From NCBI GenBank assembly GCA_038087875.1, contig JAXLNO010006056.1, positions 1-50,437 on the forward strand: DNA of 50,437 bases. Direction: 5' to 3'. The position numbers and the translations under genes are program-made. The notes beneath the pieces are model-generated. The model searched no databases. It was given only the letters and a program-made list of their open reading frames with translations, and was not told the DNA's origin. Within the stretch, counting starts at the first letter, position 1. Every line of letters starts with the position of its first letter. This document shows positions 11,072 to 46,537 of the stretch, in pieces. The stretch comes from Malacoraja senta (taxonomy: Eukaryota).

Positions 11072-14000
11072 TGAACTGAGAAATTCAACAATTTAAGTCT
11101 GTTTGTCGTCAAGTTCGTTCCACCCTATGAATGTAAAATAATTTTTATAACGGTTAAAGAGGGAACAATTTATGTTGTATGAAAGTGTTCAATAAATTTT
11201 CCCCAAGTCTTATCAAATTTAACCAAGGGTTCAACAATGTCACTTCTGATTTTTTCTAAATTTAAACATGATATCGTTTCAGAATACCACTGGAGTGTGG
11301 TCGGAGGGTTGGAATCTTTCGATTTAAAGAAAATAAATCTTCTGGCAATTAATGTGGTAAAAGCAATCAGCCGATGGGCGGAGTGGGACAAGTGAATAGA
11401 ATCTAACATTGGTAACCCAAAAATTGCAGTAATAGGATGAGGTTGTAAATCTATACCTAAGACTACCGAAATAGTATCAACAATTTCTTTCCAATATTTT
11501 TCCAAAAGAGGGCAGGACCAAAACATATGGGTCAGTGATGCCACTTCAGAGTTACATCTGTCACAGGTAGGATTTATATGACCATAAAAACGAGCTAACT
11601 TATCTTTTGACATATGAGCTCTGTGGACCACCTTGAATTGTATCAATGCGTGTCTTGCACACATTGAAGAGATATTAACTAATTGAAGGATCCTCTCCCA
11701 TTTCTCTATAGATAAAGACATTTGGAGTTCTCTTTCCCAGTCATTCTTAATTTTATCAAATGTATCTATTTGTAATTTTAAAATCAACTCATGAATAGTC
11801 GTTATTAATCCTTTCTGATAAGGGTTCAACTGTAAAAAAAATTCCAAAATTTCGGGTTGATGTGGTAGTGGAAAATGGGGTAGTTCCTTTTGTCTAATTT
11901 GTAAATATCTAAAAAAGTGTGAATTAGGTAAGTTATATTTATTGGAGAGTTGTTCGAAAGACATAAAACAACCCTCCAAAAACAAATCACGAAAAGCTAC
12001 TAATCCCTTCCTCTTCCATAACAAAAAAACTTGATCAGTACTAGATGGTTGGAAGAGAAATTTGGGTAAAATCAGATAGTCCAAAAAACTTACGAAATTG
12101 AAACCGTATTCGGAACATATGTCTTATTATTGGGTTCGTCATATATTTATTCAATCTCGTAATTGTAAAAGGTAACGAGGTCCCTAGAATAGAAGCCAAT
12201 TATAGCCCTTGTAAGGAATCACGTTCTAGGTTTATCCATCCAGGGCATTGGGTATCTTCTAAATCTTTTGTCCAAAATGTTAAATAACGAACATTGACTG
12301 CCCAATAGTAGAGTCTAAGGTTCGGCATTGCCAAACCACCAACTTTTTTTGATTTCTGTAGGTATTTTTTACCTAGTCTGGGATTTTTATTCTGCCATAT
12401 ATATGAAGAAATTTTAGAGTCTATAATATCAAAGAAAGATTTGGCAATAAAAATTGGTATCGTCTGAAATAAATACAGAAATTTAGGTAAAATGAACATT
12501 TTAATAGCATTGATTCAGCCAATTAAGGATAAGGACATTGGTGACCATTTAGTGAACTGATGTTTAATATGGTCAATTAAAGGAATAAAATTAGCTTTAA
12601 ATAAATCCTTGTGTTTCTTGGTGATCTTAATACCTAAATAAGTAAAACTTTCGGTAGTCACTCTAAATGGAAACTGCCCATAACTCGAAACAAAATTATT
12701 TAATGGGAAAGCTCACCCTTACAAAGATTTAGTTTATTACCAGAAAAACTACTGAATTGATTAAGTAATGCTACTATTACCGGAATAGATTTCTCAGGGT
12801 TAGAAATAAATAATAACAGATCATCTGCATAAAGAGATAGCTTATGTGTCTTATTCCCGCGGACAATACCAAAAATCTTAGGGGATTCCCTAATAGTAGT
12901 GGCTAAAGTTTCCAAAGCAATATCAAATAGTAAAGGACTTAAGGGACAGCCCTGTCTAGTACCTTGAAAGAGCCTGAAAAAAGGGGATCTCTGATTTTTA
13001 GTAAATACAGAAGCCTGAGGTATAAGATATAGCAGTTTGATCCAAGAGATAAATTTTGGACCAATCTTAACTTTTTCAAGTATATTGAATAAGTATTCCA
13101 TTCTACTCTATCAATAGCCTTCTCGGCATCAAGTGAGATGACACATTCTGGGGTTTATTAGACGCTGTATATACAATATTTATTAATCTCCTAACATTAA
13201 AGAATGAGTAACGATTTTTAATAAAACCTGTCTGATCTTCAGAGATAATTTGCGGTAAAATCTTTTCCAATCTCATAGGTAATATTTTGGAAAGAATTTT
13301 AAAATCTACATTTAACATTGATATAGGTCTATATGATGTCACTTCAGTAGGGTCTTTATCTTTTTTTTAAATTAAAGAAATAGAAGCTTCATAAAAAGAT
13401 TGTGGTAATCTATTCCTTAAAAAGGCTTCTTTAAATACCTTGCATAGCCATGGAGACAATAAATTTGAGAAATACTTTTAAAATTCTACTGTAAACCCAT
13501 CTAAACTGGGAGCATTACCAGAATTCATTGAAAAAATTGCTTTCTGAATTTCTTCTTCCATGATGGGTTCATCTAACAACAGAGACTCATTGTATGGTAA
13601 ATTTGGTAAGTTCAGTTTCTTTAAAAACTCATGCATTATATTGGAATCAGTAGGAAAATCTGATTGGTATAGGGAGGTATAAAATTCCTGAAAGGATTTA
13701 TTAATTTCGTCATGGTCTACAGTTACTGTACCATCCCGTTTACTCACTTTAGTAATCTGACGCTTGGCCGACACTGCCTCAATTGATTAGCAAGTAATTT
13801 TCGCCATTTATATAAAATTGACTTTTGGTTTTAAGTAACTGGTTCTCAATCGGTGATACCAATAACAAATCATATCTCAATTGAAGTTCAACTCTATTCT
13901 TATAGAGCTCTAAACTAGGAGCTTTTGAATATTTTTTATCAATTTCTTTAATCTCGTCAGCCAATGTGCGTATTTCTTTTTGTGTTTGTTTTTTTAATCC

Positions 14001-14903
14001 CGCGGAGTATGAAATAATTTGTCCACGAATATATGCCTTAAAAGCATCCCAAACTATACCATTGGATATCTCTTCATTAGAGTTTGTCAAGAAGTAAAAA
14101 GCAATCTGATCTTTCATAAACTTAATAAAGTTTAAGTCTTGAAGCAAAGTAGCATTAAATCGCCATTGTTTAGCACTAAACTTGGAATCAGGTAGTTTGA
14201 TCAATAGTTTCACAGGTGCATGATCAGAAATAGCAATTGTATCATACTCACATGCAATGACCGATGGAACTAGCCGAGAATCTAGTATAAAATAGTTGAT
14301 CCTAGAATAACTATGGGAATAGAATACATGAGAGAAAAATGAAAATTATTTGTCATTTGCGTGTAAGAATCTCCAAATTTCTAACATTCCCGAGTCAAGT
14401 AAAAAATAATTAATAAAATTAGCTGATTTATTTGGAAGCACATGATCAGATGTAGACCTATCAATCGAGGGATTCAAACTGCAATTGAAGTCTCCACCCA
14501 TTATTAAAAAGTGTTCATTTAAATTAGGAAAGGATGCAATTAACTGTTTAAAAAACTCAGGGTGATCAATATTTGGTGCATAGACATTCACCATAGCGAC
14601 TTTTTGCCTATAAAGGACACCGGTAATCACCAAGAATCTGCCATATGGATCAGAAATTGTTTCATAGTGAACAAACGGAATTGAGGGGTCAATAAAAATA
14701 GAGACTCCTTTCACCTTAGCCTGTGAATTTGAATGAAACTGCTGTCCTCTCCAAAACTTGAAAAATCGTGACTTGTCGTCTTGCCTTACATGAGTTTCCT
14801 GAACAAAGATAATCTGAGCATTTAGTCTGTGAAGAACTTTTTTTTTTAAATCCTCTTAATGGGATGGTTCAACCATTCACATTCCATGAAAGGAAATTAG
14901 TAA

Positions 14904-15507
14904 AGGCTCTGTCTTACCTGTTTGCGGTCATCGGCGGTGAAGCACGGCGTCGCCGGTAGCGGGGACCGCGTGGCAACGACGAGAGCGGCGAGCCTATCCA
15001 CCGGAGCGCCGCACGGATGCTGCGCGGGGGCCGAGTAATTCAAACACGGCGGGTCCCACGTGCTTGCGGTAAATTAAAAAAAGGGCGGGCCGACTGCGAT
15101 GACGTCGGCCCGCCGCACGTGACTCACGAGCGGCGGCTGTGGCGGCGGCCATCCTGATCGCGGCGCTGTAGCGGTGGCTGTGCCTGCGGCCGTGCAGCAC
15201 ACGTGCCTCACTGGCGGCGGCACGTGCCTCACTGGCGGAGGCTGTGGCAGTGGAGGTTTGACGCACGGCGCTCGAGCCACACTGGCGGCGGCCCGTGCGG
15301 GCGGCCGTGCCGCACTCGTGCGTCACTGGTGGAGGTTGTGCGGTGAGTATATAGTTTTCGACATTGTCGATTTTATTTTAGCACCGTGCGGTGTTGGGAA
15401 CACCGCCGCACGGCCCCGGAATTGTACGTTCTCACGAGTGCGCGGTCTATGGCGGCAGATTCTTCCCGTTTCGCCGCCAATGACCGCAGACTCGTGAGAC
15501 AGGCCTT
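14904..15507 (-). mobile_element. 604-bp Harbinger-like MITE in unit 1
   Basis: Exact TAA target duplication (14901-14903, 15508-15510) and imperfect TIRs. Removing the element and one TSD restores ATG TAT AAA GTT ACT AAT TTC CTT TCA TGG AAT GTG (MYKVTNFLSWNV). Confidence 0.85.
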
Positions 15508-15823
15508 TAACTTTATACATATTGCTTGTAAAAATCATGTGGGATGTAATGGGTTAATTTCTTGAAGCCTAAAAGTTCATAATACTGGAAGAAGAAAAAT
15601 CTAGGGCGGAGTCAGAAGTGACGACATTACAGACAATTTTGTAGTTCAGAATTTGCACAAATGGAGATCACTAAATAGGGAACAAAAGACCCCTCCCCCT
15701 CCCCCTTCCCCCCTCCCACCCCTGTAGAACCCCAAACTGACCAAAAGACAGTCAGCAAACTACCTAATACCCTCCCCAATCCCATCTCTTCCAGTAACAG
15801 CGCTCAGCATAAAAAGAATAATA

Positions 15824-18800
15824 CTGAATTGATTAAGTAATGCTACTATTACCGGAATAGATTTCTCAGGGTTAGAAATAAATAATAACAGATCATCTGC
15901 ATAAAGAGATAGCTTATGTGTCTTATTCCCGCGGACAATACCAAAAATCTTAGGGGATTCCCTAATAGTAGTGGCTAAAGTTTCCAAAGCAATATCAAAT
16001 AGTAAAGGACTTAAGGGACAGCCCTGTCTAGTACCTTGAAAGAGCCTGAAAAAAGGGGATCTCTGATTTTTAGTAAATACAGAAGCCTGAGGTATAAGAT
16101 ATAGCAGTTTGATCCAAGAGATAAATTTTGGACCAATCTTAACTTTTTCAAGTATATTGAATAAGTGTTCCATTCTACTCTATCAATAGCCTTCTCGGCA
16201 TCAAGTGAGATGACACATTCTGGGGTTTATTAGACGCTGTATATACAATATTTATTAATCTCCTAACATTAAAGAATGAGTAACGATTTTTAATAAAACC
16301 TGTCTGATCTTCAGAGATAATTTGCGGTAAAATCTTTTCCAATCTCATAGGTTATATTTTGGAAAGAATTTTAAAATCTACATTTAACATTGATATAGGT
16401 CTATATGATGTCACTTCAGTAGGGTCTTTATCTTTTTTTTAAATTAAAGAAATAGAAGCTTCATAAAAAGATTGTGGTAATCTATTCCTTAAAAAGGCTT
16501 CTTTAAATACCTTGCATAGCCATGGAGACAATAAATTTGAGAAATACTTTTAAAATTCTACTGTAAACCCATCTAAACTGGGAGCATTACCAGAATTCAT
16601 TGAAAAAATTGCTTTCTGAATTTCTTCTTCCATGATGGGTTCATCTAACAACAGAGACTCATTGTATGGTAAATTTGGTAAGTTCAGTTTCTTTAAAAAC
16701 TCATGCATTATATTGGAATCAGTAGGAAAATCTGATTGGTATAGGGAGGTATAAAATTCCTGAAAGGATTTATTAATTTCGTCATGGTCTACAGTTACTG
16801 TACCATCCCGTTTACTCACTTTAGTAATCTGACGCTTGGCCGACACTGCCTCAATTGATTAGCAAGTAATTTTCGCCATTTATATAAAATTGACTTTTGG
16901 TTTTAAGTAACTGGTTCTCAATCGGTGATACTAATAACAAATCATATCTCAATTGAAGTTCAACTCTATTCTTATAGAGCTCTAAACTAGGAGCTTTTGA
17001 ATATTTTTTATCAATTTCTTTAATCTCGTCAGCCAATGTGCGTATTTCTTTTTGTGTTTGTTTTTTTAATCCCGCGGAGTATGAAATAATTTGTCCACGA
17101 ATATATGCCTTAAAAGCATCCCAAACTATACCATTGGATATCTCTTCATTAGAGTTTGTCAAGAAGTAAAAAGCAATCTGATCTTTCATAAACTTAATAA
17201 AGTTTAAGTCTTGAAGCAAAGTAGCATTAAATCGCCATTGTTTAGCACTAAACTTGGAATCAGGTAGTTTGATCAATAGTTTCACAGGTGCATGATCAGA
17301 AATAGCAATTGTATCATACTCACATGCAATGACCGATGGAACTAGCCGAGAATCTAGTATAAAATAGTTGATCCTAGAATAACTATGGGAATAGAATACA
17401 TGAGAGAAAAATGAAAATTATTTGTCATTTGCGTGTAAGAATCTCCAAATTTCTAACATTCCCGAGTCAAGTAAAAAATAATTAATAAAATTAGCTGATT
17501 TATTTGGAAGCACATGATCAGATGTAGACCTATCAATCGAGGGATTCAAACTGCAATTGAAGTCTCCACCCATTATTAAAAAGTGTTCATTTAAATTAGG
17601 AAAGGATGCAATTAACTGTTTAAAAAACTCAGGGTGATCAATATTTGGTGCATAGACATTCACCATAGCGACTTTTTGCCTATAAAGGACACCGGTAATC
17701 ACCAAGAATCTGCCATATGGATCAGAAATTGTTTCATAGTGAACAAACGGAATTGAGGGGTCAATAAAAATAGAGACTCCTTTCACCTTAGCCTGTGAAT
17801 TTGAATGAAACTGCTGTCCTCTCCAAAACTTGAAAAATCGTGACTTGTCGTCTTGCCTTACATGAGTTTCCTGAACAAAGATAATCTGAGCATTTAGTCT
17901 GTGAAGAACTTTTTTTTTAAAATCCTCTTAATGGGATGGTTCAACCATTCACATTCCATGAAAGGAAATTAGTAAAGGCTCTGTCTTACCTGTTTGCGGT
18001 CATCGGCGGTGAAGCACGGCGTCGCCGGTAGCGGGGACCGCGTGGCAACGACGAGAGCGGCGAGCCTATCCACCGGAGCGCCGCACGGATGCTGCGCGGG
18101 GGCCGAGTAATTCAAACACGGCGGGTCCCACGTGCTTGCGGTAAATTAAAAAAAGGGCGGGCCGACTGCGATGACGTCGGCCCGCCGCACGTGACTCACG
18201 AGCGGCGGCTGTGGCGGCGGCCATCCTGATCGCGGCGCTGTAGCGGTGGCTGTGCCTGCGGCCGTGCAGCACACGTGCCTCACTGGCGGCGGCACGTGCC
18301 TCACTGGCGGAGGCTGTGGCAGTGGAGGTTTGACGCACGGCGCTCGAGCCACACTGGCGGCGGCCCGTGCGGGCGGCCGTGCCGCACTCGTGCGTCACTG
18401 GTGGAGGTTGTGCGGTGAGTATATAGTTTTCGACATTGTCGATTTTATTTTAGCACCGTGCGGTGTTGGGAACACCGCCGCACGGCCCCGGAATTGTACG
18501 TTCTCACGAGTGCGCGGTCTATGGCGGCAGATTCTTCCCGTTTCGCCGCCAATGACCGCAGACTCGTGAGACAGGCCTTTAACTTTATACATATTGCTTG
18601 TAAAAATCATGTGGGATGTAATGGGTTAATTTCTTGAAGCCTAAAAGTTCATAATACTGGAAGAAGAAAAATCTAGGGCGGAGTCAGAAGTGACGACATT
18701 ACAGACAATTTTGTAGTTCAGAATTTGCACAAATGGAGATCACTAAATAGGGAACAAAAGACCCCTCCCCCTCCCCCTTCCCCCCTCCCACCCCTGTAGA

Positions 18801-18895
18801 ACCCCAAACTGACCAAAAGACAGTCAGCAAACTACCTAATACCCTCCCCAATCCCATCTCTCCCAGTAACAGCGCTCAGCATAAAAAGAATAATA
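15824..18895 (-). repeat. Array unit 2 (L1 RT/EN fragment + MITE 17976-18579 + spacer)
   Basis: Near-identical to unit 1; 3072 bp. Confidence 0.95.
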
Positions 18896-21800
18896 CTGAA
18901 TGGATTAAGTAATGCTACTATTACCGGAATAGATTTCTCAGGGTTAGAAATAAATAATAACAGATCATCTGCATAAAGAGATAGCTTATGTGTCTTATTC
19001 CCGCGGACAATACCAAAAATCTTAGGGGATTCCCTAATAGTAGTGGCTAAAGTTTCCAAAGCAATATCAAATAGTAAAGGACTTAAGGGACAGCCCTGTC
19101 TAGTACCTTGAAAGAGCCTGAAAAAAAGGGGATCTCTGATTTTTAGTAAATACAGAAGCCTGAGGTATAAGATATAGCAGTTTGATCCAAGAGATAAATT
19201 TTGGACCAATCTTAACTTTTTCAAGTATATTGAATAAGTATTCCATTCTACTCTATCAATAGCCTTCTCGGCATCAAGTGAGATGACACATTCTGGGGTT
19301 TATTAGACGCTGTATATACAATATTTATTAATCTCCTAACATTAAAGAATGAGTAACGATTTTTAATAAAACCTGTCTGATCTTCAGAGATAATTTGCGG
19401 TAAAATCTTTTCCAATCTCATAGGTTATATTTTGGAAAGAATTTTAAAATCTACATTTAACATTGATATAGGTCTATATGATGTCACTTCAGTAGGGTCT
19501 TTATCTTTTTTTTAAATTAAAGAAATAGAAGCTTCATAAAAAGATTGTGGTAATCTATTCCTTAAAAAGGCTTCTTTAAATACCTTGCATAGCCATGGAG
19601 ACAATAAATTTGAGAAATACTTTTAAAATTCTACTGTAAACCCATCTAAACTGGGAGCATTACCAGAATTCATTGAAAAAATTGCTTTCTGAATTTCTTC
19701 TTCCATGATGGGTTCATCTAACAACAGAGACTCATTGTATGGTAAATTTGGTAAGTTCAGTTTCTTTAAAAACTCATGCATTATATTGGAATCAGTAGGA
19801 AAATCTGATTGGTATAGGGAGGTATAAAATTCCTGAAAGGATTTATTAATTTCGTCATGGTCTACAGTTACTGTACCATCCCGTTTACTCACTTTAGTAA
19901 TCTGACGCTTGGCCGACACTGCCTCAATTGATTAGCAAGTAATTTTCGCCATTTATATAAAATTGACTTTTGGTTTTAAGTAACTGGTTCTCAATCGGTG
20001 ATACTAATAACAAATCATATCTCAATTGAAGTTCAACTCTATTCTTATAGAGCTCTAAACTAGGAGCTTTTGAATATTTTTTATCAATTTCTTTAATCTC
20101 GTCAGCCAATGTGCGTATTTCTTTTTGTGTTTGTTTTTTTAATCCCGCGGAGTATGAAATAATTTGTCCACGAATATATGCCTTAAAAGCATCCCAAACT
20201 ATACCATTGGATATCTCTTCATTAGAGTTTGTCAAGAAGTAAAAAGCAATCTGATCTTTCATAAACTTAATAAAGTTTAAGTCTTGAAGCAAAGTAGCAT
20301 TAAATCGCCATTGTTTAGCACTAAACTTGGAATCAGGTAGTTTGATCAATAGTTTCACAGGTGCATGATCAGAAATAGCAATTGTATCATACTCACATGC
20401 AATGACCGATGGAACTAGCCGAGAATCTAGTATAAAATAGTTGATCCTAGAATAACTATGGGAATAGAATACATGAGAGAAAAATGAAAATTATTTGTCA
20501 TTTGCGTGTAAGAATCTCCAAATTTCTAACATTCCCGAGTCAAGTAAAAAATAATTAATAAAATTAGCTGATTTATTTGGAAGCACATGATCAGATGTAG
20601 ACCTATCAATCGAGGGATTCAAACTGCAATTGAAGTCTCCACCCATTATTAAAAAGTGTTCATTTAAATTAGGAAAGGATGCAATTAACTGTTTAAAAAA
20701 CTCAGGGTGATCAATATTTGGTGCATAGACATTCACCATAGCGACTTTTTGCCTATAAAGGACACCGGTAATCACCAAGAATCTGCCATATGGATCAGAA
20801 ATTGTTTCATAGTGAACAAACGGAATTGAGGGGTCAATAAAAATAGAGACTCCTTTCACCTTAGCCTGTGAATTTGAATGAAACTGCTGTCCTCTCCAAA
20901 ACTTGAAAAATCGTGACTTGTCGTCTTGCCTTACATGAGTTTCCTGAACAAAGATAATCTGAGCATTTAGTCTGTGAAGAACTTTTTTTTTTAAATCCTC
21001 TTAATGGGATGGTTCAACCATTCACATTCCATGAAAGGAAATTAGTAAAGGCTCTGTCTTACCTGTTTGCGGTCATCGGCGGTGAAGCACGGCGTCGCCG
21101 GTAGCGGGGACCGCGTGGCAACGACGAGAGCGGCGAGCCTATCCACCGGAGCGCCGCACGGATGCTGCGCGGGGGCCGAGTAATTCAAACACGGCGGGTC
21201 CCACGTGCTTGCGGTAAATTAAAAAAAGGGCGGGCCGACTGCGATGACGTCGGCCCGCCGCACGTGACTCACGAGCGGCGGCTGTGGCGGCGGCCATCCT
21301 GATCGCGGCGCTGTAGCGGTGGCTGTGCCTGCGGCCGTGCAGCACACGTGCCTCACTGGCGGCGGCACGTGCCTCACTGGCGGAGGCTGTGGCAGTGGAG
21401 GTTTGACGCACGGCGCTCGAGCCACACTGGCGGCGGCCCGTGCGGGCGGCCGTGCCGCACTCGTGCGTCACTGGTGGAGGTTGTGCGGTGAGTATATAGT
21501 TTTCGACATTGTCGATTTTATTTTAGCACCGTGCGGTGTTGGGAACACCGCCGCACGGCCCCGGAATTGTACGTTCTCACGAGTGCGCGGTCTATGGCGG
21601 CAGATTCTTCCCGTTTCGCCGCCAATGACCGCAGACTCGTGAGACAGGCCTTTAACTTTATACATATTGCTTGTAAAAATCATGTGGGATGTAATGGGTT
21701 AATTTCTTGAAGCCTAAAAGTTCATAATACTGGAAGAAGAAAAATCTAGGGCGGAGTCAGAAGTGACGACATTACAGACAATTTTGTAGTTCAGAATTTG

Positions 21801-34256: not shown

Positions 34257-37200
34257 CTGAATTGATTAAGTAATGCTACTATTACCGGAATAGATTTCTC
34301 AGGGTTAGAAATAAATAATAACAGATCATCTGCATAAAGAGATAGCTTATGTGTCTTATTCCCGCGGACAATACCAAAAATCTTAGGAGATTCCCTAATA
34401 GTAGTGGCTAAAGTTTCCAAAGCAATATCAAATAGTAAAGGACTTAAGGGACAGCCCTGTCTAGTACCTTGAAAGAGCCTGAAAAAAGGGGATCTCTGAT
34501 TTTTAGTAAATACAGAAGCCTGAGGTATAAGATATAGCAGTTTGATCCAAGAGATAAATTTTGGACCAATCTTAACTTTTTCAAGTATATTGAATAAGTA
34601 TTCCATTCTACTCTATCAATAGCCTTCTCGGCATCAAGTGAGATGACACATTCTGGGGTTTATTAGACGCTGTATATACAATATTTATTAATCTCCTAAC
34701 ATTAAAGAATGAGTAACGATTTTTAATAAAACCTGTCTGATCTTCAGAGATAATTTGCGGTAAAATCTTTTCCAATCTCATAGGTTATATTTTGGAAAGA
34801 ATTTTAAAATCTACATTTAACATTGATATAGGTCTATATGATGTCACTTCAGTAGGGTCTTTATCTTTTTTTTAAATTAAAGAAATAGAAGCTTCATAAA
34901 AAGATTGTGGTAATCTATTCCTTAAAAAGGCTTCTTTAAATACCTTGCATAGCCATGGAGACAATAAATTTGAGAAATACTTTTAAAATTCTACTGTAAA
35001 CCCATCTAAACTGGGAGCATTACCAGAATTCATTGAAAAAATTGCTTTCTGAATTTCTTCTTCCATGATGGGTTCATCTAACAACAGAGACTCATTGTAT
35101 GGTAAATTTGGTAAGTTCAGTTTCTTTAAAAACTCATGCATTATATTGGAATCAGTAGGAAAATCTGATTGGTATAGGGAGGTATAAAATTCCTGAAAGG
35201 ATTTATTAATTTCGTCATGGTCTACAGTTACTGTACCATCCCGTTTACTCACTTTAGTAATCTGACGCTTGGCCGACACTGCCTCAATTGATTAGCAAGT
35301 AATTTTCGCCATATATATAAAATTGACTTTTGGTTTTAAGTAACTGGTTCTCAATCGGTGATACTAATAACAAATCATATCTCAATTGAAGTTCAACTCT
35401 ATTCTTATAGAGCTCTAAACTAGGAGCTTTTGAATATTTTTTATCAATTTCTTTAATCTCGTCAGCCAATGTGCGTATTTCTTTTTGTGTTTGTTTTTTT
35501 AATCCCGCGGAGTATGAAATAATTTGTCCACGAATATATGCCTTAAAAGCATCCCAAACTATACCATTGGATATCTCTTCATAAGAGTTTGTCAAGAAGT
35601 AAAAAGCAATCTGATCTTTCATAAACTTAATAAAGTTTAAGTCTTGAAGCAAAGTAGCATTAAATCGCCATTGTTTAGCACTAAACTTGGAATCAGGTAG
35701 TTTGATCAATAGTTTCACAGGTGCATGATCAGAAATAGCAATTGTATCATACTCACATGCAATGACCGATGGAACTAGCCGAGAATCTAGTATAAAATAG
35801 TTGATCCTAGAATAACTATGGGAATAGAATACATGAGAGAAAAATGAAAATTATTTGTCATTTGCGTGTAAGAATCTCCAAATTTCTAACATTCCCGAGT
35901 CAAGTAAAAAATAATTAATAAAATTAGCTGATTTATTTGGAAGCACATGATCAGATGTAGACCTATCAATCGAGGGATTCAAACTGCAATTGAAGTCTCC
36001 ACCCATTATTAAAAAGTGTTCATTTAAATTAGGAAAGGATGCAATTAACTGTTTAAAAAACTCAGGGTGATCAATATTTGGTGCATAGACATTCACCATA
36101 GCGACTTTTTGCCTATAAAGGACACCGGTAATCACCAAGAATCTGCCATATGGATCAGAAATTGTTTCATAGTGAACAAACGGAATTGAGGGGTCAATAA
36201 AAATAGAGACTCCTTTCACCTTAGCCTGTGAATTTGAATGAAACTGCTGTCCTCTCCAAAACTTGAAAAATCGTGACTTGTCGTCTTGCCTTACATGAGT
36301 TTCCTGAACAAAGATAATCTGAGCATTTAGTCTGTGAAGAACTTTTTTTTTTAAATCCTCTTAATGGGATGGTTCAACCATTCACATTCCATGAAAGGAA
36401 ATTAGTAAAGGCTCTGTCTTACCTGTTTGCGGTCATCGGCGGTGAAGCACGGCGTCGCCGGTAGCGGGGACCGCGTGGCAACGACGAGAGCGGCGAGCCT
36501 ATCCACCGGAGCGCCGCACGGATGCTGCGCGGGGGCCGAGTAATTCAAACACGGCGGGTCCCACGTGCTTGCGGTAAATTAAAAAAAAGGGCGGGCCGAC
36601 TGCGATGACGTCGGCCCGCCGCACGTGACTCACGAGCGGCGGCTGTGGCGGCGGCCATCCTGATCGCGGCGCTGTAGCGGTGGCTGTGCCTGCGGCCGTG
36701 CAGCACACGTGCCTCACTGGCGGCGGCACGTGCCTCACTGGCGGAGGCTGTGGCAGTGGAGGTTTGACGCACGGCGCTCGAGCCACACTGGCGGCGGCCC
36801 GTGCGGGCGGCCGTGCCGCACTCGTGCGTCACTGGTGGAGGTTGTGCGGTGAGTATATAGTTTTCGACATTGTCGATTTTATTTTAGCACCGTGCGGTGT
36901 TGGGAACACCGCCGCACGGCCCCGGAATTGTACGTTCTCACGAGTGCGCGGTCTATGGCGGCAGATTCTTCCCGTTTCGCCGCCAATGACCGCAGACTCG
37001 TGAGACAGGCCTTTAACTTTATACATATTGCTTGTAAAAATCATGTGGGATGTAATGGGTTAATTTCTTGAAGCCTAAAAGTTCATAATACTGGAAGAAG
37101 AAAAATCTAGGGCGGAGTCAGAAGTGACGACATTACAGACAATTTTGTAGTTCAGAATTTGCACAAATGGAGATCACTAAATAGGGAACAAAAGACCCCT

Positions 37201-37329
37201 CCCCCTCCCCCTTCCCCCCTCCCACCCCTGTAGAACCCCAAACTGACCAAAAGACAGTCAGCAAACTACCTAATACCCTCCCCAATCCCATCTCTCCCAG
37301 TAACAGCGCTCAGCATAAAAAGAATAATA
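34257..37329 (-). repeat. Array unit 8 (MITE 36409-37013)
   Basis: 3073 bp; shares variants with units 6 and 11. Confidence 0.95.
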
Positions 37330-40300
37330 CTGAATTGATTAAGTAATGCTACTATTACCGGAATAGATTTCTCAGGGTTAGAAATAAATAATAACAGATC
37401 ATCTGCATAAAGAGATAGCTTATGTGTCTTATTCCCGCGGACAATACCAAAAATCTTAGGGGATTCCCTAATAGTAGTGGCTAAAGTTTCCAAAGCAATA
37501 TCAAATAGTAAAGGACTTAAGGGACAGCCCTGTCTAGTACCTTGAAAGAGCCTGAAAAAAGGGGATCTCTGATTTTTAGTAAATACAGAAGCCTGAGGTA
37601 TAAGATATAGCAGTTTGATCCAAGAGATAAATTTTGGACCAATCTTAACTTTTTCAAGTATATTGAATAAGTATTCCATTCTACTCTATCAATAGCCTTC
37701 TCGGCATCAAGTGAGATGACACATTCTGGGGTTTATTAGACGCTGTATATACAATATTTATTAATCTCCTAACATTAAAGAATGAGTAACGATTTTTAAT
37801 AAAACCTGTCTGATCTTCAGAGATAATTTGCGGTAAAGTCTTTTCCAATCTCATAGGTAATATTTTGGAAAGAATTTTAAAATCTACATTTAACATTGAT
37901 ATAGGTCTATATGATGTCACTTCAGTAGGGTCTTTATCTTTTTTTTAAATTAAAGAAATAGAAGCTTCATAAAAAGATTGTGGTAATCTATTCCTTAAAA
38001 AGGCTTCTTTAAATACCTTGCATAGCCATGGAGACAATAAATTTGAGAAATACTTTTAAAATTCTACTGTAAACCCATCTAAACTGGGAGCATTACCAGA
38101 ATTCATTGAAAAAATTGCTTTCTGAATTTCTTCTTCCATGATGGGTTCATCTAACAACAGAGACTCATTGTATGGTAAATTTGGTAAGTTCAGTTTCTTT
38201 AAAAACTCATGCATTATATTGGAATCAGTAGGAAAATCTGATTGGTATAGGGAGGTATAAAATTCCTGAAAGGATTTATTAATTTCGTCATGGTCTACAG
38301 TTACTGTACCATCCCGTTTACTCACTTTAGTAATCTGACGCTTGGCCGACACTGCCTCAATTGATTAGCAAGTAATTTTCGCCATTTATATAAAATTGAC
38401 TTTTGGTTTTAAGTAACTGGTTCTCAATCGGTGATACTAATAACAAATCATATCTCAATTGAAGTTCAACTCTATTCTTATAGAGCTCTAAACTAGGAGC
38501 TTTTGAATATTTTTTATCAATTTCTTTAATCTCGTCAGCCAATGTGCGTATTTCTTTTTGTGTTTGTTTTTTTAATCCCGCGGAGTATGAAATAATTTGT
38601 CCACGAATATATGCCTTAAAAGCATCCCAAACTATACCATTGGATATCTCTTCATTAGAGTTTGTCAAGAAGTAAAAAGCAATCTGATCTTTCATAAACT
38701 TAATAAAGTTTAAGTCTTGAAGCAAAGTAGCATTAAATCGCCATTGTTTAGCACTAAATTTGGAATCAGGTAGTTTGATCAATAGTTTCACAGGTGCATG
38801 ATCAGAAATAGCAATTGTATCATACTCACATGCAATGACCGATGGAACTAGCCGAGAATCTAGTATAAAATAGTTGATCCTAGAATAACTATGGGAATAG
38901 AATACATGAGAGAAAAATGAAAATTGTCATTTGCGTGTAAGAATCTCCAAATTTCTAACATTCCCGAGTCAAGTAAAAAATAATTAATAAAATTAGCTGA
39001 TTTATTTGGAAGCACATGATCAGATGTAGACCTATCAATCGAGGGATTCAAACTGCAATTGAAGTCTCCACCCATTATTAAAAAGTGTTCATTTAAATTA
39101 GGAAAGGATGCAATTAACTGTTTAAAAAACTCAGGGTGATCAATATTTGGTGCATAGACATTCACCATAGCGACTTTTTGCCTATAAAGGACACCGGTAA
39201 TCACCAAGAATCTGCCATATGGATCAGAAATTGTTTCATAGTGAACAAACGGAATTGAGGGGTCAATAAAAATAGAGACTCCTTTCACCTTAGCCTGTGA
39301 ATTTGAATGAAACTGCTGTCCTCTCCAAAACTTGAAAAATCGTGACTTGTCGTCTTGCCTTACATGAGTTTCCTGAACAAAGATAATCTGAGCATTTAGT
39401 CTGTGAAGAACTTTTTTTTTTAAATCCTCTTAATGGGATGGTTCAACCATTCACATTCCATGAAAGGAAATTAGTAAAGGCTCTGTCTTACCTGTTTGCG
39501 GTCATCGGCGGTGAAGCACGGCGTCGCCGGTAGCGGGGACCGCGTGGCAACGACGAGAGCGGCGAGCCTATCCACCGGAGCGCCGCACGGATGCTGCGCG
39601 GGGGCCGAGTAATTCAAACACGGTGGGTCCCACGTGCTTGCGGTAAATTAAAAAAAGGGCGGGCCGACTGCGATGACGTCGGCCCGCCGCACGTGACTCA
39701 CGAGCGGCGGCTGTGGCGGCGGCCATCCTGATCGCGGCGCTGTAGCGGTGGCTGTGCCTGCGGCCGTGCAGCACACGTGCCTCACTGGCGGCGGCACGTG
39801 CCTCACTGGCGGAGGCTGTGGCAGTGGAGGTTTGACGCACGGCGCTCGAGCCACACTGGCGGCGGCCCGTGCGGGCGGCCGTGCCGCACTCGTGCGTCAC
39901 TGGTGGAGGTTGTGCGGTGAGTATATAGTTTTCGACATTGTCGATTTTATTTTAGCACCGTGCGGTGTTGGGAACACCGCCGCACGGCCCCGGAATTGTA
40001 CGTTCTCACGAGTGCGCGGTCTATGGCGGCAGATTCTTCCCGTTTCGCCGCCAATGACCGCAGACTCGTGAGACAGGCCTTTAACTTTATACATATTGCT
40101 TGTAAAAATCATGTGGGATGTAATGGGTTAATTTCTTGAAGCCTAAAAGTTCATAATACTGGAAGAAGAAAAATCTAGGGCGGAGTCAGAAGTGACGACA
40201 TTACAGACAATTTTGTAGTTCAGAATTTGCACAAATGGAGATCACTAAATAGGGAACAAAAGACCCCTCCCCCTCCCCCTTCCCCCCTCCCACCCCTGTA

Positions 40301-40397
40301 GAACCCCAAACTGACCAAAAGACAGTCAGCAAACTACCTAATACCCTCCCCAATCCCATCTCTCCCAGTAACAGCGCTCAGCATAAAAAGAATAATA
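37330..40397 (-). repeat. Array unit 9 (MITE 39478-40081)
   Basis: 3068 bp; 4-bp deletion shared with unit 10. Confidence 0.95.
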
Positions 40398-43300
40398 CTG
40401 AATTGATTAAGTAATGCTACTATTACCGGAATAGATTTCTCAGGGTTAGAAATAAATAATAACAGATCATCTGCATAAAGAGATAGCTTATGTGTCTTAT
40501 TCCCGCGGACAATACCAAAAATCTTAGGGGATTCCCTAATAGTAGTGGCTAAAGTTTCCAAAGCAATATCAAATAGTAAAGGACTTAAGGGACAGCCCTG
40601 TCTAGTACCTTGAAAGAGCCTGAAAAAAGGGGATCTCTGATTTTTAGTAAATACAGAAGCCTGAGGTATAAGATATAGCAGTTTGATCCAAGAGATAAAT
40701 TTTGGACCAATCTTAACTTTTTCAAGTATATTGAATAAGTATTCCATTCTACTCTATCAATAGCCTTCTCGGCATCAAGTGAGATGACACATTCTGGGGT
40801 TTATTAGACGCTGTATATACAATATTTATTAAGCTCCTAACATTAAAGAATGAGTAACGATTTTTAATAAAACCTGTCTGATCTTCAGAGATAATTTGCG
40901 GTAAAATCTTTTCCAATCTCATAGGTAATATTTTGGAAAGAATTTTAAAATCTACATTTAACATTGATATAGGTCTATATGATGTCACTTAAGTAGGGTC
41001 TTTATCTTTTTTTTAAATTAAAGAAATAGAAGCTTCATAAAAAGATTGTTGTAATCTATTCCTTAAAAAGGCTTCTTTAAATACCTTGCATAGCCATGGA
41101 GACAATAAATTTGAGAAATACTTTTAAAATTCTACTGTAAACCCATCTAAACTGGGAGCATTACCAGAATTCATTGAAAAAATTGCTTTCTGAATTTCTT
41201 CTTCCATGATGGGTTCATCTAACAACAGAGACTCATTGTATGGTAAATTTGGTAAGTTCAGTTTCTTTAAAAACTCATGCATTATATTGGAATCAGTAGG
41301 AAAATCTGATTGGTATAGGGAGGTATAAAATTCCTGAAAGGATTTATTAATTTCGTCATGGTCTACAGTTACTGTACCATCCCGTTTACTCACTTTAGTA
41401 ATCTGACGCTTGGCCGACACTGCCTCAATTGATTAGCAAGTAATTTTCGCCATTTATATAAAATTGACTTTTGGTTTTAAGTAACTGGTTCTCAATCGGT
41501 GATACTAATAACAAATCATATCTCAATTGAAGTTCAACTCTATTCTTATAGAGCTCTAAACTAGGAGCTTTTGAATATTTTTTATCAATTTCTTTAATCT
41601 CGTCAGCCAATGTGCGTATTTCTTTTTGTGTTTGTTTTTTTAATCCCGCGGAGTATGAAATAATTTGTCCACGAATATATGCCTTAAAAGCATCCCAAAC
41701 TATACCATTGGATATCTCTTCATTAGAGTTTGTCAAGAAGTAAAAAGCAATCTGATCTTTCATAAACTTAATAAAGTTTAAGTCTTGAAGCAAAGTAGCA
41801 TTAAATCGCCATTGTTTAGCACTAAACTTGGAATCAGGTAGTTTGATCAATAGTTTCACAGGTGCATGATCAGAAATAGCAATTGTATCATACTCACATG
41901 CAATGACCGATGGAACTAGCCGAGAATCTAGTATAAAATAGTTGATCCTAGAATAACTATGGGAATAGAATACATGAGAGAAAAATGAAAATTGTCATTT
42001 GCGTGTAAGAATCTCCAAATTTCTAACATTCCCGAGTCAAGTAAAAAATAATTAATAAAATTAGCTGATTTATTTGGAAGCACATGATCAGATGTAGACC
42101 TATCAATCGAGGGATTCAAACTGCAATTGAAGTCTCCACCCATTATTAAAAAGTGTTCATTTAAATTAGGAAAGGATGCAATTAACTGTTTAAAAAACTC
42201 AGGGTGATCAATATTTGGTGCATAGACATTCACCATAGCGACTTTTTGCCTATAAAGGACACCGGTAATCACCAAGAATCTGCCATATGGATCAGAAATT
42301 GTTTCATAGTGAACAAACGGAATTGAGGGGTCAATAAAAATAGAGACTCCTTTCACCTTAGCCTGTGAATTTGAATGAAACTGCTGTCATCTCCAAAACT
42401 TGAAAAATCGTGACTTGTCGTCTTGCCTTACATGAGTTTCCTGAACAAAGATAATCTGAGCATTTAGTCTGTGAAGAACTTTTTTTTTAAAATCCTCTTA
42501 ATGGGATGGTTCAACCATTCACATTCCATGAAAGGAAATTAGTAAAGGCTCTGTCTTACCTGTTTGCGGTCATCGGCGGTGAAGCACGGCGTCGCCGGTA
42601 GCGGGGACCGCGTGGCAACGACGAGAGCGGCGAGCCTATCCACCGGAGCGCCGCACGGATGCTGCGCGGGGGCCGAGTAATTCAAACACGGCGGGTCCCA
42701 CGTGCTTGCGGTAAATTAAAAAAAGGGCGGGCCGACTGCGATGACGTCGGCCCGCCGCACGTGACTCACGAGCGGCGGCTGTGGCGGCGGCCATCCTGAT
42801 CGCGGCGCTGTAGCGGTGGCTGTGCCTGCGGCCGTGCAGCACACGTGCCTCACTGGCGGCGGCACGTGCCTCACTGGCGGAGGCTGTGGCAGTGGAGGTT
42901 TGACGCACGGCGCTCGAGCCACACTGGCGGCGGCCCGTGCGGGCGGCCGTGCCGCACTCGTGCGTCACTGGTGGAGGTTGTGCGGTGAGTATATAGTTTT
43001 CGACATTGTCGATTTTATTTTAGCACCGTGCGGTGTTGGGAACACCGCCGCACGGCCCCGGAATTGTACGTTCTCACGAGTGCGCGGTCTATGGCGGCAG
43101 ATTCTTCCCGTTTCGCCGCCAATGACCGCAGACTCGTGAGACAGGCCTTTAACTTTATACATATTGCTTGTAAAAATCATGTGGGATGTAATGGGTTAAT
43201 TTCTTGAAGCCTAAAAGTTCATAATACTGGAAGAAGAAAAATCTAGGGCGGAGTCAGAAGTGACGACATTACAGACAATTTTGTAGTTCAGAATTTGCAC

Positions 43301-43465
43301 AAATGGAGATCACTAAATAGGGAACAAAAGACCCCTCCCCCTCCCCCTTCCCCCCTCCCACCCCTGTAGAACCCCAAACTGACCAAAAGACAGTCAGCAA
43401 ACTACCTAATACCCTCCCCAATCCCATCTCTCCCAGTAACAGCGCTCAGCATAAAAAGAATAATA
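40398..43465 (-). repeat. Array unit 10 (MITE 42546-43149)
   Basis: 3068 bp; 4-bp deletion shared with unit 9. Confidence 0.95.
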
Positions 43466-46400
43466 CTGAATTGATTAAGTAATGCTACTATTACCGGAAT
43501 AGATTTCTCAGGGTTAGAAATAAATAATAACAGATCATCTGCATAAAGAGATAGCTTATGTGTCTTATTCCCGCGGACAATACCAAAAATCTTAGGGGAT
43601 TCCCTAATAGTAGTGGCTAAAGTTTCCAAAGCAATATCAAATAGTAAAGGACTTAAGGGACAGCCCTGTCTAGTACCTTGAAAGAGCCTGAAAAAAGGGG
43701 ATCTCTGATTTTTAGTAAATACAGAAGCCTGAGGTATAAGATATAGCAGTTTGATCCAAGAGATAAATTTTGGACCAATCTTAACTTTTTCAAGTATATT
43801 GAATAAGTATTCCATTCTACTCTATCAATAGCCTTCTCGGCATCAAGTGAGATGACACATTCTGGGGTTTATTAGACGCTGTATATACAATATTTATTAA
43901 TCTCCTAACATTAAAGAATGAGTAACGATTTTTAATAAAACCTGTCTGATCTTCAGAGATAATTTGCGGTAAAATCTTTTCCAATCTCATAGGTAATATT
44001 TTGGAAAGAATTTTAAAATCTACATTTAACATTGATATAGGTCTATATGATGTCACTTCAGTAGGGTCTTTATCTTTTTTTTAAATTAAAGAAATAGAAG
44101 CTTCATAAAAAGATTGTGGTAATCTATTCCTTAAAAAGGCTTCTTTAAATACCTTGCATAGCCATGGAGACAATAAATTTGAGAAATACTTTTAAAATTC
44201 TACTGTAAACCCATCTAAACTGGGAGCATTACCAGAATTCATTGAAAAAATTGCTTTCTGAATTTCTTCTTCCATGATGGGTTCATCTAACAACAGAGAC
44301 TCATTGTATGGTAAATTTGGTAAGTTCAGTTTCTTTAAAAACTCATGCATTATATTGGAATCAGTAGGAAAATCTGATTGGTATAGGGAGGTATAAAATT
44401 CCTGAAAGGATTTATTAATTTCGTCATGGTCTACAGTTACTGTACCATCCCGTTTACTCACTTTAGTAATCTGACGCTTGGCCGACACTGCCTCAATTGA
44501 TTAGCAAGTAATTTGCGCCATTTATATAAAATTGACTTTTGGTTTTAAGTAACTGGTTCTCAATCGGTGATACTAATAACAAATCATATCTCAATTGAAG
44601 TTCAACTCTATTCTTATAGAGCTCTAAACTAGGAGCTTTTGAATATTTTTTATCAATTTCTTTAATCTCGTCAGCCAATGTGCGTATTTCTTTTTGTGTT
44701 TGTTTTTTTAATCCCGCGGAGTATGAAATAATTTGTCCACGAATATATGCCTTAAAAGCATCCCAAACTATACCATTGGATATCTCTTCATAAGAGTTTG
44801 TCAAGAAGTAAAAAGCAATCTGATCTTTCATAAACTTAATAAAGTTTAAGTCTTGAAGCAAAGTAGCATTAAATCGCCATTGTTTAGCACTAAACTTGGA
44901 ATCAGGTAGTTTGATCAATAGTTTCACAGGTGCATGATCAGAAATAGCAATTGTATCATACTCACATGCAATGACCGATGGAACTAGCCGAGAATCTAGT
45001 ATAAAATAGTTGATCCTAGAATAACTATGGGAATAGAATACATGAGAGAAAAATGAAAATTATTTGTCATTTGCGTGTAAGAATCTCCAAATTTCTAACA
45101 TTCCCGAGTCAAGTAAAAAATAATTAATAAAATTAGCTGATTTATTTGGAAGCACATGATCAGATGTAGACCTATCAATCGAGGGATTCAAACTGCAATT
45201 GAAGTCTCCACCCATTATTAAAAAGTGTTCATTTAAATTAGGAAAGGATGCAATTAACTGTTTAAAAAACTCAGGGTGATCAATATTTGGTGCATAGACA
45301 TTCACCATAGCGACTTTTTGCCTATAAAGGACACCGGTAATCACCAAGAATCTGCCATATGGATCAGAAATTGTTTCATAGTGAACAAACGGAATTGAGG
45401 GGTCAATAAAAATAGAGACTCCTTTCACCTTAGCCTGTGAATTTGAATGAAACTGCTGTCCTCTCCAAAACTTGAAAAATCGTGACTTGTCGTCTTGCCT
45501 TACATGAGTTTCCTGAACAAAGATAATCTGAGCATTTAGTCTGTGAAGAACTTTTTTTTTTAAATCCTCTTAATGGGATGGTCCAACCATTCACATTCCA
45601 TGAAAGGAAATTAGTAAAGGCTCTGTCTTACCTGTTTGCGGTCATCGGCGGTGAAGCACGGCGTCGCCGGTAGCGGGGACCGCGTGGCAACGACGAGAGC
45701 GGCGAGCCTATCCACCGGAGCGCCGCACGGATGCTGCGCGGGGGCCGAGTAATTCAAACACGGCGGGTCCCACGTGCTTGCGGTAAATTAAAAAAAGGGC
45801 GGGCCGACTGCGATGAAGTCGGCCCGCCGCACGTGACTCACGAGCGGCGGCTGTGGCGGCGGCCATCCTGATCGCGGCGCTGTAGCGGTGGCTGTGCCTG
45901 CGGCCGTGCAGCACACGTGCCTCACTGGCGGCGGCACGTGCCTCACTGGCGGAGGCTGTGGCAGTGGAGGTTTGACGCACGGCGCTCGAGCCACACTGGC
46001 GGCGGCCCGTGCGGGCGGCCGTGCCGCACTCGTGCGTCACTGGTGGAGGTTGTGCGGTGAGTATATAGTTTTCGACATTGTCGATTTTATTTTAGCACCG
46101 TGCGGTGTTGGGAACACCGCCGCACGGCCCCGGAATTGTACGTTCTCACGAGTGCGCGGTCTATGGCGGCAGATTCTTCCCGTTTCGCCGCCAATGACCG
46201 CAGACTCGTGAGACAGGCCTTTAACTTTATACATATTGCTTGTAAAAATCATGTGGGATGTAATGGGTTAATTTCTTGAAGCCTAAAAGTTCATAATACT
46301 GGAAGAAGAAAAATCTAGGGCGGAGTCAGAAGTGACGACATTACAGACAATTTTGTAGTTCAGAATTTGCACAAATGGAGATCACTAAATAGGGAACAAA

Positions 46401-46537
46401 AGACCCCTCCCCCTCTCCCTTCCCCCCTCCCACCCCTGTAGAACCCCAAACTGACCAAAAGACAGTCAGCAAACTACCTAATACCCTCCCCAATCCCATC
46501 TCTCCCAGTAACAGCGCTCAGCATAAAAAGAATAATA
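43466..46537 (-). repeat. Array unit 11 (MITE 45618-46221)
   Basis: 3072 bp; continues into unique L1-upstream sequence at 46538. Confidence 0.95.

What the first reader, a model, noticed from the sequence alone, without database searches (positions are those of the whole stretch)
12752..46537. 34-kb macrosatellite built from a chimeric L1-MITE module (11 x 3.07 kb) next to an MHC class I-like gene
Seen: each unit, read on the - strand, is L1 inter-ORF spacer (G-rich) > ATG > 604-bp CpG-rich MITE > endonuclease > RT through LYADD, then a jump back to the spacer. The array sits inside one L1, whose unique 3' part (10682-12751) and 5' part (46538+) flank it, so it grew in situ by internal tandem amplification rather than by retrotransposition. 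Units are about 99% or more identical by eye. The result is alternating ~0.6-kb GC-rich and ~2.5-kb AT-rich blocks, reminiscent of D4Z4/DXZ4-type macrosatellite architecture (analogy only). Inference: a newborn TE-derived macrosatellite that may be copy-number variable, form a chromatin boundary or silencer for the adjacent class I-like gene, or produce anti-L1 small RNAs. I cannot show it is functional or undescribed.
Basis: partly seen in the sequence, partly recalled or inferred. Interest (0 to 1): 0.75.

Follow-up and report, generated by a model that had tools for sequence, protein, structure and literature searches.

The report
Eleven-copy tandem array of L1–MITE segment
A 3.07-kb piece from the middle of a dead L1 jumping gene, which already carried a small GC-rich DNA transposon, sits head-to-tail 11 times in this (apparently skate) genome assembly; it is a clean but ordinary example of transposon debris becoming a large tandem repeat, with no sign of function and not yet confirmed in raw reads.

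Summary
Window 12750-46537 is exactly 11 head-to-tail units of 3068-3074 bp, 99.5-99.9% identical. Read on the minus strand, each unit has about 300 bp of G-rich sequence upstream of the L1 ORF2 start. Then come the ATG and three more codons, a 604-bp PIF/Harbinger-type MITE (TTA duplication, CpG island), the L1 endonuclease, and the reverse transcriptase to 27 codons past YADD. The array is flanked by the rest of the same L1, and the junction shows 2 bp of microhomology (TA). The L1 was already dead, because all units share the same stops and frameshifts. The best reading is therefore one microhomology-mediated internal tandem duplication, expanded in place by unequal exchange; U5-U6 and U7-U8 form a duplicated dimer. 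I found nothing that supports a function: no CTCF consensus and no RNA evidence. The neighbouring MHC-like exon is 10.7 kb away and frame-shifted. Public runs were available only as contigs, so whether the junction exists outside this assembly, and the copy number, stay untested. The differences between units have an error-like spectrum. TE-derived tandem arrays and composite elements are well known, so this is a new member of a known kind and of low to moderate interest.

The parts
12750..46537 (-). Whole tandem array: 11.0 units of about 3072 bp; the L1 sense strand is the minus strand
12750..15821 (-). Unit 1 (3072 bp); MITE with both TTA duplications at 14901-15510
15822..18893 (-). Unit 2 (3072 bp), the reference unit. 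On the minus strand: upstream G-rich region 18893-18593; ORF2 ATG 18592-18590; MITE plus TSDs 18582-17973; EN from 17972; YADD codons 15903-15892; junction at 15822|15821
18894..21966 (-). Unit 3 (3073 bp); MITE 21046-21655
21967..25038 (-). Unit 4 (3072 bp); MITE 24118-24727
25039..28110 (-). Unit 5 (3072 bp); MITE 27190-27799; shares derived variants with unit 7
28111..31182 (-). Unit 6 (3072 bp); MITE 30262-30871; shares a derived variant with unit 8
31183..34254 (-). Unit 7 (3072 bp); MITE 33334-33943
34255..37327 (-). Unit 8 (3073 bp); MITE 36406-37016
37328..40395 (-). Unit 9 (3068 bp); MITE 39475-40084; shares a 4-bp deletion with unit 10
40396..43463 (-). Unit 10 (3068 bp); MITE 42543-43152
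43464..46537 (-). Unit 11 (3074 bp as cut, including the 2-bp TA shared with the right flank); MITE 45615-46224
10690..12749 (-). Unique 3' part of the same L1: rest of the RT, zf-RVT domain (ORF 11170-12084), 3' UTR and an A-rich tail near 10690. It contains the N run 10929-11071, which was left untouched
46538..46900 (-). Unique 5' continuation of the L1 upstream of the array. The end near 46900 is approximate and inferred from where repeat-family contig depth drops. No ORF1 domain was detected
18762..18864 (-). Two G4-like G-tracts on the minus strand (18762-18805 and 18842-18864), 30-130 bp from the junction; the same pair recurs in nearly every unit
9363..9981 (+). Independent copy of the same MITE family outside the array, in the opposite orientation, 96% identical, with the same TTA-type flanks. 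It shows that the insert is a dispersed element

Best explanation
This is a young, locus-specific tandem array, a macrosatellite-like composite repeat, made from an internal 3,072-bp segment of one already dead L1 copy. The likely order of events is as follows. (1) An L1-clade element inserted on the minus strand. (2) A 604-bp PIF/Harbinger-type MITE inserted at a TTA four codons into ORF2, and the L1 accumulated stops and frameshifts. (3) A single rearrangement joined a point 27 codons past the RT YADD motif to a point about 300 bp upstream of the ORF2 ATG. It used 2 bp of microhomology (TA) and created a tandem duplication of the segment in between. A replication template switch is plausible, perhaps helped by the G4-like tracts 30-130 bp from the breakpoint. 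(4) Unequal sister-chromatid or homologue exchange then expanded the duplicate to about 11 units; one step was a two-unit (6.1-kb) duplication. Steps 1 and 2 and the junction structure are shown by the sequence. The template-switch and G4 trigger and the unequal-exchange expansion are inferred. The array most likely has no function and is a neutral by-product that is probably variable in copy number.
For: Both edges are colinear with one L1. The RT ORF crosses the left edge and extends to RVT_1 position 190, against 174 at the internal junctions. A zf-RVT domain and an A-rich tail lie further 3'. Repeat-family depth continues about 360 bp beyond the right edge. All ten junctions are the same, with TA shared by both parental breakpoints. 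The same broken ORF pattern repeats at a 3072-bp offset, so the L1 was dead before amplification and retrotransposition is excluded. The MITE is at the same site with the same TTA duplication in all 11 units. A second genomic copy has the same ends, and L1 copies without it exist in contigs, seen as joints that skip 607-615 bp. Four informative sites give U5-U6 the same pattern as U7-U8, and U9 and U10 share a 4-bp deletion, which indicates unit-register exchange. G4-like tracts lie next to the breakpoint. TE-derived tandem arrays are a documented route (PMC6947457, PMC9659126, bioRxiv 10.1101/2021.07.12.451456).
Against: No raw reads were available, and the contig-based run data do not show whether any read bridges the junction, so existence and copy number rest on the assembly alone. 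Differences between units are 14 transitions to 22 transversions with almost no CpG excess. This differs from the normal spectrum between the two MITE copies (15:4; Fisher p=0.0096). Part of the 'variation' may therefore be consensus or polishing error, and the dimer signal rests on few sites. There is no isolation by distance among units (Mantel r about 0), so gradual unequal exchange is not clearly favoured over a single burst. An N run lies 1.7 kb from the array edge.
Confidence: 0.75

Rival explanations
1. Assembly artefact or mis-sized array: the genome holds fewer units (possibly two or three, or even one), or a different number, and the assembler or polisher produced the 11 near-identical units and many of their differences.
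For: The substitution spectrum between units is error-like (14 ts to 22 tv, little CpG excess). An N run lies 1.7 kb from the array. The MHC-like exon nearby changes frame at a G homopolymer, which is a typical long-read error. No independent read support could be obtained.
Against: A junction that is absent from the reads cannot be assembled, so at least one duplication must exist. The units carry distinct private and shared variants in a coherent two-unit pattern, not identical copies. One shared minor allele (unit column 1330, U8 and U11) differs from the L1-family base seen in all contigs, so it is not a mis-polish towards the family consensus.
Confidence: 0.13
2. The locus is the same, but the mechanism was a burst. 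A 3,072-bp circle excised by TA microhomology (eccDNA), or a re-replication or rolling-circle event, produced a multi-unit concatemer in one step, which then recombined into or stayed at the parental L1.
For: The relationships among units are star-like, with 34 of 44 variable columns singletons, and neighbours are no more similar than distant units. This fits near-simultaneous origin of most units.
Against: The array has exactly whole units in register with both parental flanks, which simple tandem duplication explains without an excision and reintegration step. Shared variants (U5/U7, U6/U8, U9/U10) show at least some stepwise exchange. The star-like pattern may partly be sequencing noise.
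Confidence: 0.1
3. A functional macrosatellite. The periodic CpG-island MITEs (each with four CACGTG E-boxes) and AT-rich L1 blocks act as a chromatin boundary or silencer for the neighbouring MHC-like gene, or as a small-RNA source against L1.
For: Each unit has a 604-bp block with 65% GC and CpG observed/expected of 1.27, four E-boxes and G4-like tracts. Size and architecture resemble D4Z4/DXZ4. Other TE-built macrosatellites near immune genes were flagged in the same genome (unchecked).
Against: The array has no CTCF-consensus match and no Rfam family, and no RNA run holds it. The CpG richness and the E-boxes are properties of every copy of a very abundant MITE family, not of this array. 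The only nearby MHC-like exon is 10.7 kb away, separated by other TEs, and frame-shifted. The array is too young for conservation to be assessed.
Confidence: 0.05
4. The 3.07-kb chimera is a dispersed or mobile unit present at many loci, and this locus is just one cluster.
For: Both components belong to very high-copy families.
Against: The junction string occurs only at unit boundaries in the window. The array is embedded colinearly in its parental L1. The unit has no ends, promoter-to-polyA structure or TSD of its own. Loose ends at the unit start in contigs show only the ordinary L1 continuation. No other window of this genome was reported with the unit; this is weak, since a blank means little.
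Confidence: 0.03

Closest known systems
Composite element arrays of the T2T-CHM13 human repeat annotation (Hoyt et al., bioRxiv 10.1101/2021.07.12.451456)
   Same: These are tandemly arrayed kb-scale units built from pieces of TEs plus other repeats. They are found at single or few loci, evolve as one unit, and some are copy-number variable.
   Different: That definition asks for three or more repeat components. Here the unit has two TE components plus a G-rich low-complexity tract. This is a different species and different elements, and no methylation or transcription data exist.
L1/CR1-derived satellite DNAs: common cetacean satellite, PROsat of Phodopus roborovskii (ORF2), Pvc20 of harbour seal (ORF2), chicken HinfI/CR1 (reviews PMC6947457, PMC9659126)
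   Same: A LINE internal or 3' segment has been converted into a tandem repeat.
   Different: Those are high-copy, often multi-locus or heterochromatic satellites whose LINE origin is only partly recognisable. Here a single 34-kb array is still embedded in its parental element, with both breakpoints intact, which makes it a birth-stage example.
Human macrosatellites D4Z4 (3.3 kb) and DXZ4 (3.0 kb) (PMC5687341, PMC3081327)
   Same: Unit size is about 3 kb, the array has about 10 or more units, and each unit contains a CpG-rich block.
   Different: D4Z4 carries the DUX4 retrogene and DXZ4 binds CTCF. Both are GC-rich throughout, polymorphic and epigenetically characterised. Here there is no gene and no CTCF consensus. 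Only 20% of the unit is GC-rich, and polymorphism is unknown.
Satellite birth from TE insertions and duplications (McGurk and Barbash 2018, Genome Research; cited from memory, not read here)
   Same: A first TE-associated duplication gives the substrate for unequal exchange, which then expands the array.
   Different: That model starts from two insertions of the same TE at one site. Here the first step is an internal microhomology-mediated duplication within a single L1.

Membership tests
L1-clade non-LTR retrotransposon (the parental element) | N-terminal APE-type endonuclease followed by a reverse transcriptase with the YADD/FADD motif, in one ORF2 | tested here: met
   The EN piece 17418-17786(-) matches human L1 ORF2p residues 73-186 (E=5.5e-14). 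The RT piece 12700-13101(-) matches ORF2p residues 612-739 (E=1e-24) and RVT_1. YADD was read at 15903-15892.
L1-clade non-LTR retrotransposon (the parental element) | C-terminal cysteine-rich (zf-RVT) region and an A-rich 3' end | tested here: met
   zf-RVT in ORF 11170-12084(-) (E=2.5e-6, above the Pfam cut-off). A-rich tail near 10690.
L1-clade non-LTR retrotransposon (the parental element) | ORF1 upstream of ORF2 | tested here: inconclusive
   The stop-free pieces of 46538-47100(-) gave no Pfam hit. The copy seems 5'-truncated near 46900.
PIF/Harbinger-type MITE | 3-bp TWA (TTA/TAA) target-site duplication | tested here: met
   TTA flanks the element on both sides in the units; the independent copy at 9363-9981 has TTA and GTA. 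Removing the element plus one TTA restores the ORF2 frame.
PIF/Harbinger-type MITE | Terminal inverted repeats, small size, no coding capacity, many dispersed copies | tested here: met
   43-nt TIRs, 77% complementary. Length 604 bp. No Pfam hit for its ORFs. A second copy lies in the window, and contig depth is very high in organism A.
PIF/Harbinger-type MITE | Ends related to an autonomous Harbinger transposon of the same genome | not testable with these tools
   No eukaryotic genome or repeat library was searchable.
Macrosatellite | Tandem repeat with a unit of about 1 kb or more forming an array of tens of kb | tested here: met
   11 units of 3072 bp make 33.8 kb.
Macrosatellite | Copy-number polymorphism between individuals | not testable with these tools
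   Only Logan contigs were available.
Composite element (T2T sense) | [quoted passage not shown] | tested here: inconclusive
   The unit has an L1 segment, a MITE and a G-rich low-complexity tract. It qualifies only if the G-tract is counted as a third repeat.
Satellite DNA (classical) | High copy number, long arrays, usually several loci or heterochromatin | tested here: not met
   Only 11 units are seen at one locus in the window. The junction is absent elsewhere in the window. Genome-wide status is untested.

The most novel reading that the evidence does not exclude
The array is a real, copy-number-variable macrosatellite. Its eleven evenly spaced CpG-island MITEs, each with four E-boxes and flanked by G4 tracts, would escape methylation and act as a regulatory or insulating block in an MHC-linked region. 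It would be one of a set of TE-built macrosatellites that this skate genome has generated preferentially near immune genes.
Probability: 0.05. Interest if true: 0.6.

Novelty: new member of a known kind. Interest (0 to 1): 0.27.

Why it matters
If real, this is an unusually legible birth-stage macrosatellite. The parental L1, both breakpoints, the 2-bp microhomology, the pre-existing MITE and the first higher-order (dimer) duplication are all still readable. It could therefore serve as a textbook example of how TE fragments become large tandem repeats, and as a marker for copy-number variation in cartilaginous fish. It does not open a new question, because TE-to-satellite conversion and composite arrays are already documented in mammals, birds, insects and plants. 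If similar arrays really cluster near immune genes in this genome (unchecked notes), a genome-wide census would be the more interesting project.

Tried and rejected
(1) TRF found nothing, because its longest period is 500; I used k-mer offsets instead. (2) A first unit split merged two units because of an anchor mismatch and was redone. (3) Read test: the look-up of sequencing runs returned only Logan contig runs with coded organisms. Read laying on 43300-49299 (6,000 letters, within the operators' limit) gave family-level information, but it neither listed nor excluded junction-bridging contigs, and contigs drop rare variants. The artefact test is therefore inconclusive. (5) The exact-sequence cluster look-up of the chimeric junction ORF and of the edge ORF found neither in the collection, which is uninformative. 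(6) Rfam at gathering thresholds gave no match in the window. (7) The CTCF consensus with up to one mismatch gave no hit in the array, and the one hit elsewhere is at chance level. (8) ORF1 upstream of the array gave no Pfam signal. (9) The second L1 3' half at 3934-5562 has no nucleotide similarity to this L1's 3' part, so it is a different family and could not be used to delimit the element. (10) Neighbour-similarity test: Mantel r about 0. (11) Earlier-findings searches by place (near), by words and by sequence were blank. (12) The large protein searches, structure prediction and complex prediction were not used, because no claim depends on them. The N run 10929-11071 was left as it is.
Full report
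OBSERVATION. The window is 50,437 bases with one N run at 10929-10071... corrected: 10929-11071. The distances between repeated 20-mers peak sharply at 3072, 3073 and 3068 bp, and the repeated zone runs from 12750 to 46537. The GC profile shows the same period, with a block of about 0.6 kb at 60-67% GC every 3 kb in a background of 29-34% GC. Anchored splitting gives 11 units of 3068-3074 bp. Pairwise differences are 4-16 positions (99.5-99.9% identity). Of 44 variable alignment columns, 34 are singletons. TRF reports nothing only because its period limit is 500.

ANATOMY OF A UNIT (minus strand, unit 2). A reverse-transcriptase frame runs through YADD (15903-15892) and 27 further codons, then jumps at 15822|15821 into the next unit. 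That unit begins with about 300 bp of non-coding sequence containing two G4-like G-tracts. Next come an ATG (18592-18590 in unit 2) and three more codons. A 604-bp GC-rich element follows, and then a frame reading NFLSWNVNG, the typical start of an L1 endonuclease. The EN fragment matches human L1 ORF2p residues 73-186 (E=5.5e-14). The RT fragment matches residues 612-739 (E=1e-24) and Pfam RVT_1. ORF2 is broken into at least six pieces (the longest ORF is 144 aa), and the same ORF pattern recurs at 3072-bp offsets. The L1 was therefore already dead when it was amplified.

THE GC-RICH INSERT IS A HARBINGER-TYPE MITE. An independent copy lies at 9363-9981 in the opposite orientation and is 96% identical. 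Aligning the two defines identical ends, each flanked by TTA (GTA on one side of the second copy). Removing the element and one TTA restores the ORF2 frame. It has 43-nt TIRs (77% complementary), a subterminal hairpin and degenerate internal subrepeats of about 21/42 bp. It is exactly 604 bp in ten units and 605 bp in one. It has 65% GC and 81 CpGs, with CpG observed/expected of 1.27 against 0.45 for the rest of the unit. Each copy carries four CACGTG motifs, and so does the outside copy. In contigs of public runs, this 600 bp has an enormous summed depth in organism A and none in organism B at 90% identity or more. Joints skipping 607-615 bp at exactly this site show L1 copies without the MITE in both organisms. 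The MITE insertion is therefore secondary and belongs to a lineage-specific burst, and it pre-dates the amplification because all 11 units carry it at the same site.

THE ARRAY SITS INSIDE ONE L1. At the left edge, the ORF 12700-13101(-) crosses position 12750 and continues the RT to RVT_1 position 190. At the internal junctions the equivalent ORF ends at profile position 174 and runs into the upstream region. Further 3' lie a zf-RVT domain (11170-12084), the 3' UTR and an A-rich tail near 10690. At the right edge the sequence continues past 46537 without the jump, and L1-family contig depth persists to about 46900. I could not show that this upstream part is an inter-ORF spacer, because no ORF1 domain is detectable. 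The junction reads ...AAAGAATAA[TA]CTGAATTG..., and the TA is present at both parental breakpoints. The junction string occurs at all ten unit boundaries (one has a single variant) and nowhere else in the window.

MECHANISM. What is shown: one breakpoint pair with 2-bp microhomology, whole-unit register with both parental flanks, and a dead template. This excludes retrotransposition and fits a single microhomology-mediated tandem duplication followed by expansion in register. What is inferred: the duplication arose by a replication template switch or end joining, possibly promoted by the G4-like tracts 30-130 bp from the 5' breakpoint. Also inferred is that expansion was by unequal exchange. 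The support for exchange is as follows. Columns 533, 1060, 1755 and 1806 give U5-U6 the same two-unit pattern as U7-U8. U9 and U10 share a 4-bp deletion. Columns 1330 (U8, U11) and 2099 (U2, U7, U10) show further, partly conflicting sharing, as expected with exchange or conversion. Against a slow stepwise history, neighbours are no more alike than distant units (Mantel r about 0), and most variants are singletons. A burst, such as rolling-circle or re-replication, remains a live variant.

HOW FAR TO TRUST THE ASSEMBLY. Mean pairwise difference is 0.31%. The substitution events are 14 transitions to 22 transversions, and only 4 lie at CpG sites. The two MITE copies differ by 15 transitions to 4 transversions, with 7 transitions in CpG context, and the two spectra differ (Fisher p=0.0096). 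Against L1-family differences in contigs (107:83), the trend is weaker (p=0.068). Part of the variation between units may therefore be consensus or polishing error, and 0.31% is an upper bound on divergence. One shared minor allele (column 1330, position 44792 in U11) differs from the base seen in all family contigs, so it is not a mis-polish towards the family consensus. All public runs were available only as Logan contigs, from low-yield runs with coded organisms. An N run (10929-11071) lies 1.7 kb from the array and was left untouched. I put about 0.85 on a real tandem array at this locus, and less on the exact number 11.

SURROUNDINGS AND FUNCTION. The 'MHC class I-like gene' is one Ig C1-set exon at 1802 to about 2110 (+) (Pfam C1-set, E=3.6e-9). 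Its best solved relatives are alpha-3 domains of MR1 and classical class I chains. Its frame changes at a G-run near 1990, so it is either a pseudogene or a homopolymer error. It lies 10.7 kb from the array and is separated from it by a second, unrelated L1 3' half (3934-5562) and the extra MITE. The 550-aa ORF at the right end (48778-50430, minus strand) is a retroelement integrase (Integrase_H2C2), not a host gene. The array has no CTCF-consensus match and no Rfam family, and no run on record as RNA holds the stretch. The CpG richness and the E-boxes belong to every copy of an abundant MITE family and are not special to the array. I therefore see no evidence for a boundary, silencer or small-RNA role, though these were not directly testable.

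COMPARISON WITH WHAT IS KNOWN. Conversion of TE segments into tandem repeats is well documented. Examples include L1-derived satellites (common cetacean satellite, PROsat and Pvc20 from ORF2) and CR1-derived chicken repeats (PMC6947457, PMC9659126). The T2T human annotation defines 'composite elements' as tandemly arrayed units built from three or more repeats including TEs (bioRxiv 10.1101/2021.07.12.451456). D4Z4 and DXZ4 share only unit size and the presence of CpG-rich sequence. Unchecked first-reader notes for the same genome, which earlier follow-ups call a skate, list other TE-built macrosatellites near immune genes (s1-140701, s1-141701, s1-141144) and Harbinger-type MITEs inserting at TTA (s1-203318). 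This kind of array therefore seems recurrent there.

VERDICT. The structural interpretation (in-situ internal amplification of an L1-MITE chimera) is supported, and the functional speculation is not. This is a new member of a known kind. It is attractive as a birth-stage example with intact breakpoints, but it needs long-read confirmation. Interest 0.27.

Noticed in passing
window 1802-2110 (+): An Ig C1-set exon, closest to MHC class I/MR1 alpha-3 domains, changes reading frame at a G-run near 1990. The conserved C-terminal half (…DGTYHL…YSCHVDHSSL…IIW) continues in another frame. It is either a pseudogene or a homopolymer assembly error. No alpha-1/alpha-2 exons were seen in the window.
   Followed up: partly
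window 45700-46300 (every MITE copy) and 9363-9981: The 604-bp MITE family has an enormous summed contig depth in organism A (1.2-1.5 million) and none in organism B at 90% identity or more, while the L1 family is shared. This points to a lineage-specific burst of a CpG-island-like MITE (CpG o/e about 1.27) that spreads four CACGTG E-boxes per copy across the genome.
   Followed up: partly
units 1-11, 44 variable columns: Differences between units are rich in transversions (14 ts to 22 tv; all six shared substitutions are transversions) and show almost no CpG excess. The two MITE copies at the same locus differ by 15 ts to 4 tv. This suggests consensus or polishing noise in the assembly of this array.
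   Followed up: partly
window 10929-11071: A 143-base N run lies inside the L1 3' UTR, 1.7 kb from the array edge.
   Followed up: no
window 3934-5562 (+): A 542-aa open frame encodes the C-terminal half of another L1 ORF2 (weak zf-RVT match). It has no nucleotide similarity to the array's L1, so it is a different and possibly younger L1 family.
   Followed up: partly
window 48778-50430 (-): A 550-aa ORF with an Integrase_H2C2 domain is a GC-rich LTR-retroelement pol fragment running off the window. It is abundant in organism A and nearly absent in organism B contigs.
   Followed up: no
window 47500-47700: A short, very high-copy repeat is shared by organisms A and B and by the small run X21 (depth peak; many loose ends at 47556 and 47605). 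It is probably a SINE or another MITE and was not identified.
   Followed up: no
window 18762-18864 and the same place in each unit: Two G4-like G-tracts on the L1 sense strand lie just upstream of ORF2 and 30-130 bp from the duplication breakpoint. They may be a trigger of fork stalling, which is inference only.
   Followed up: no
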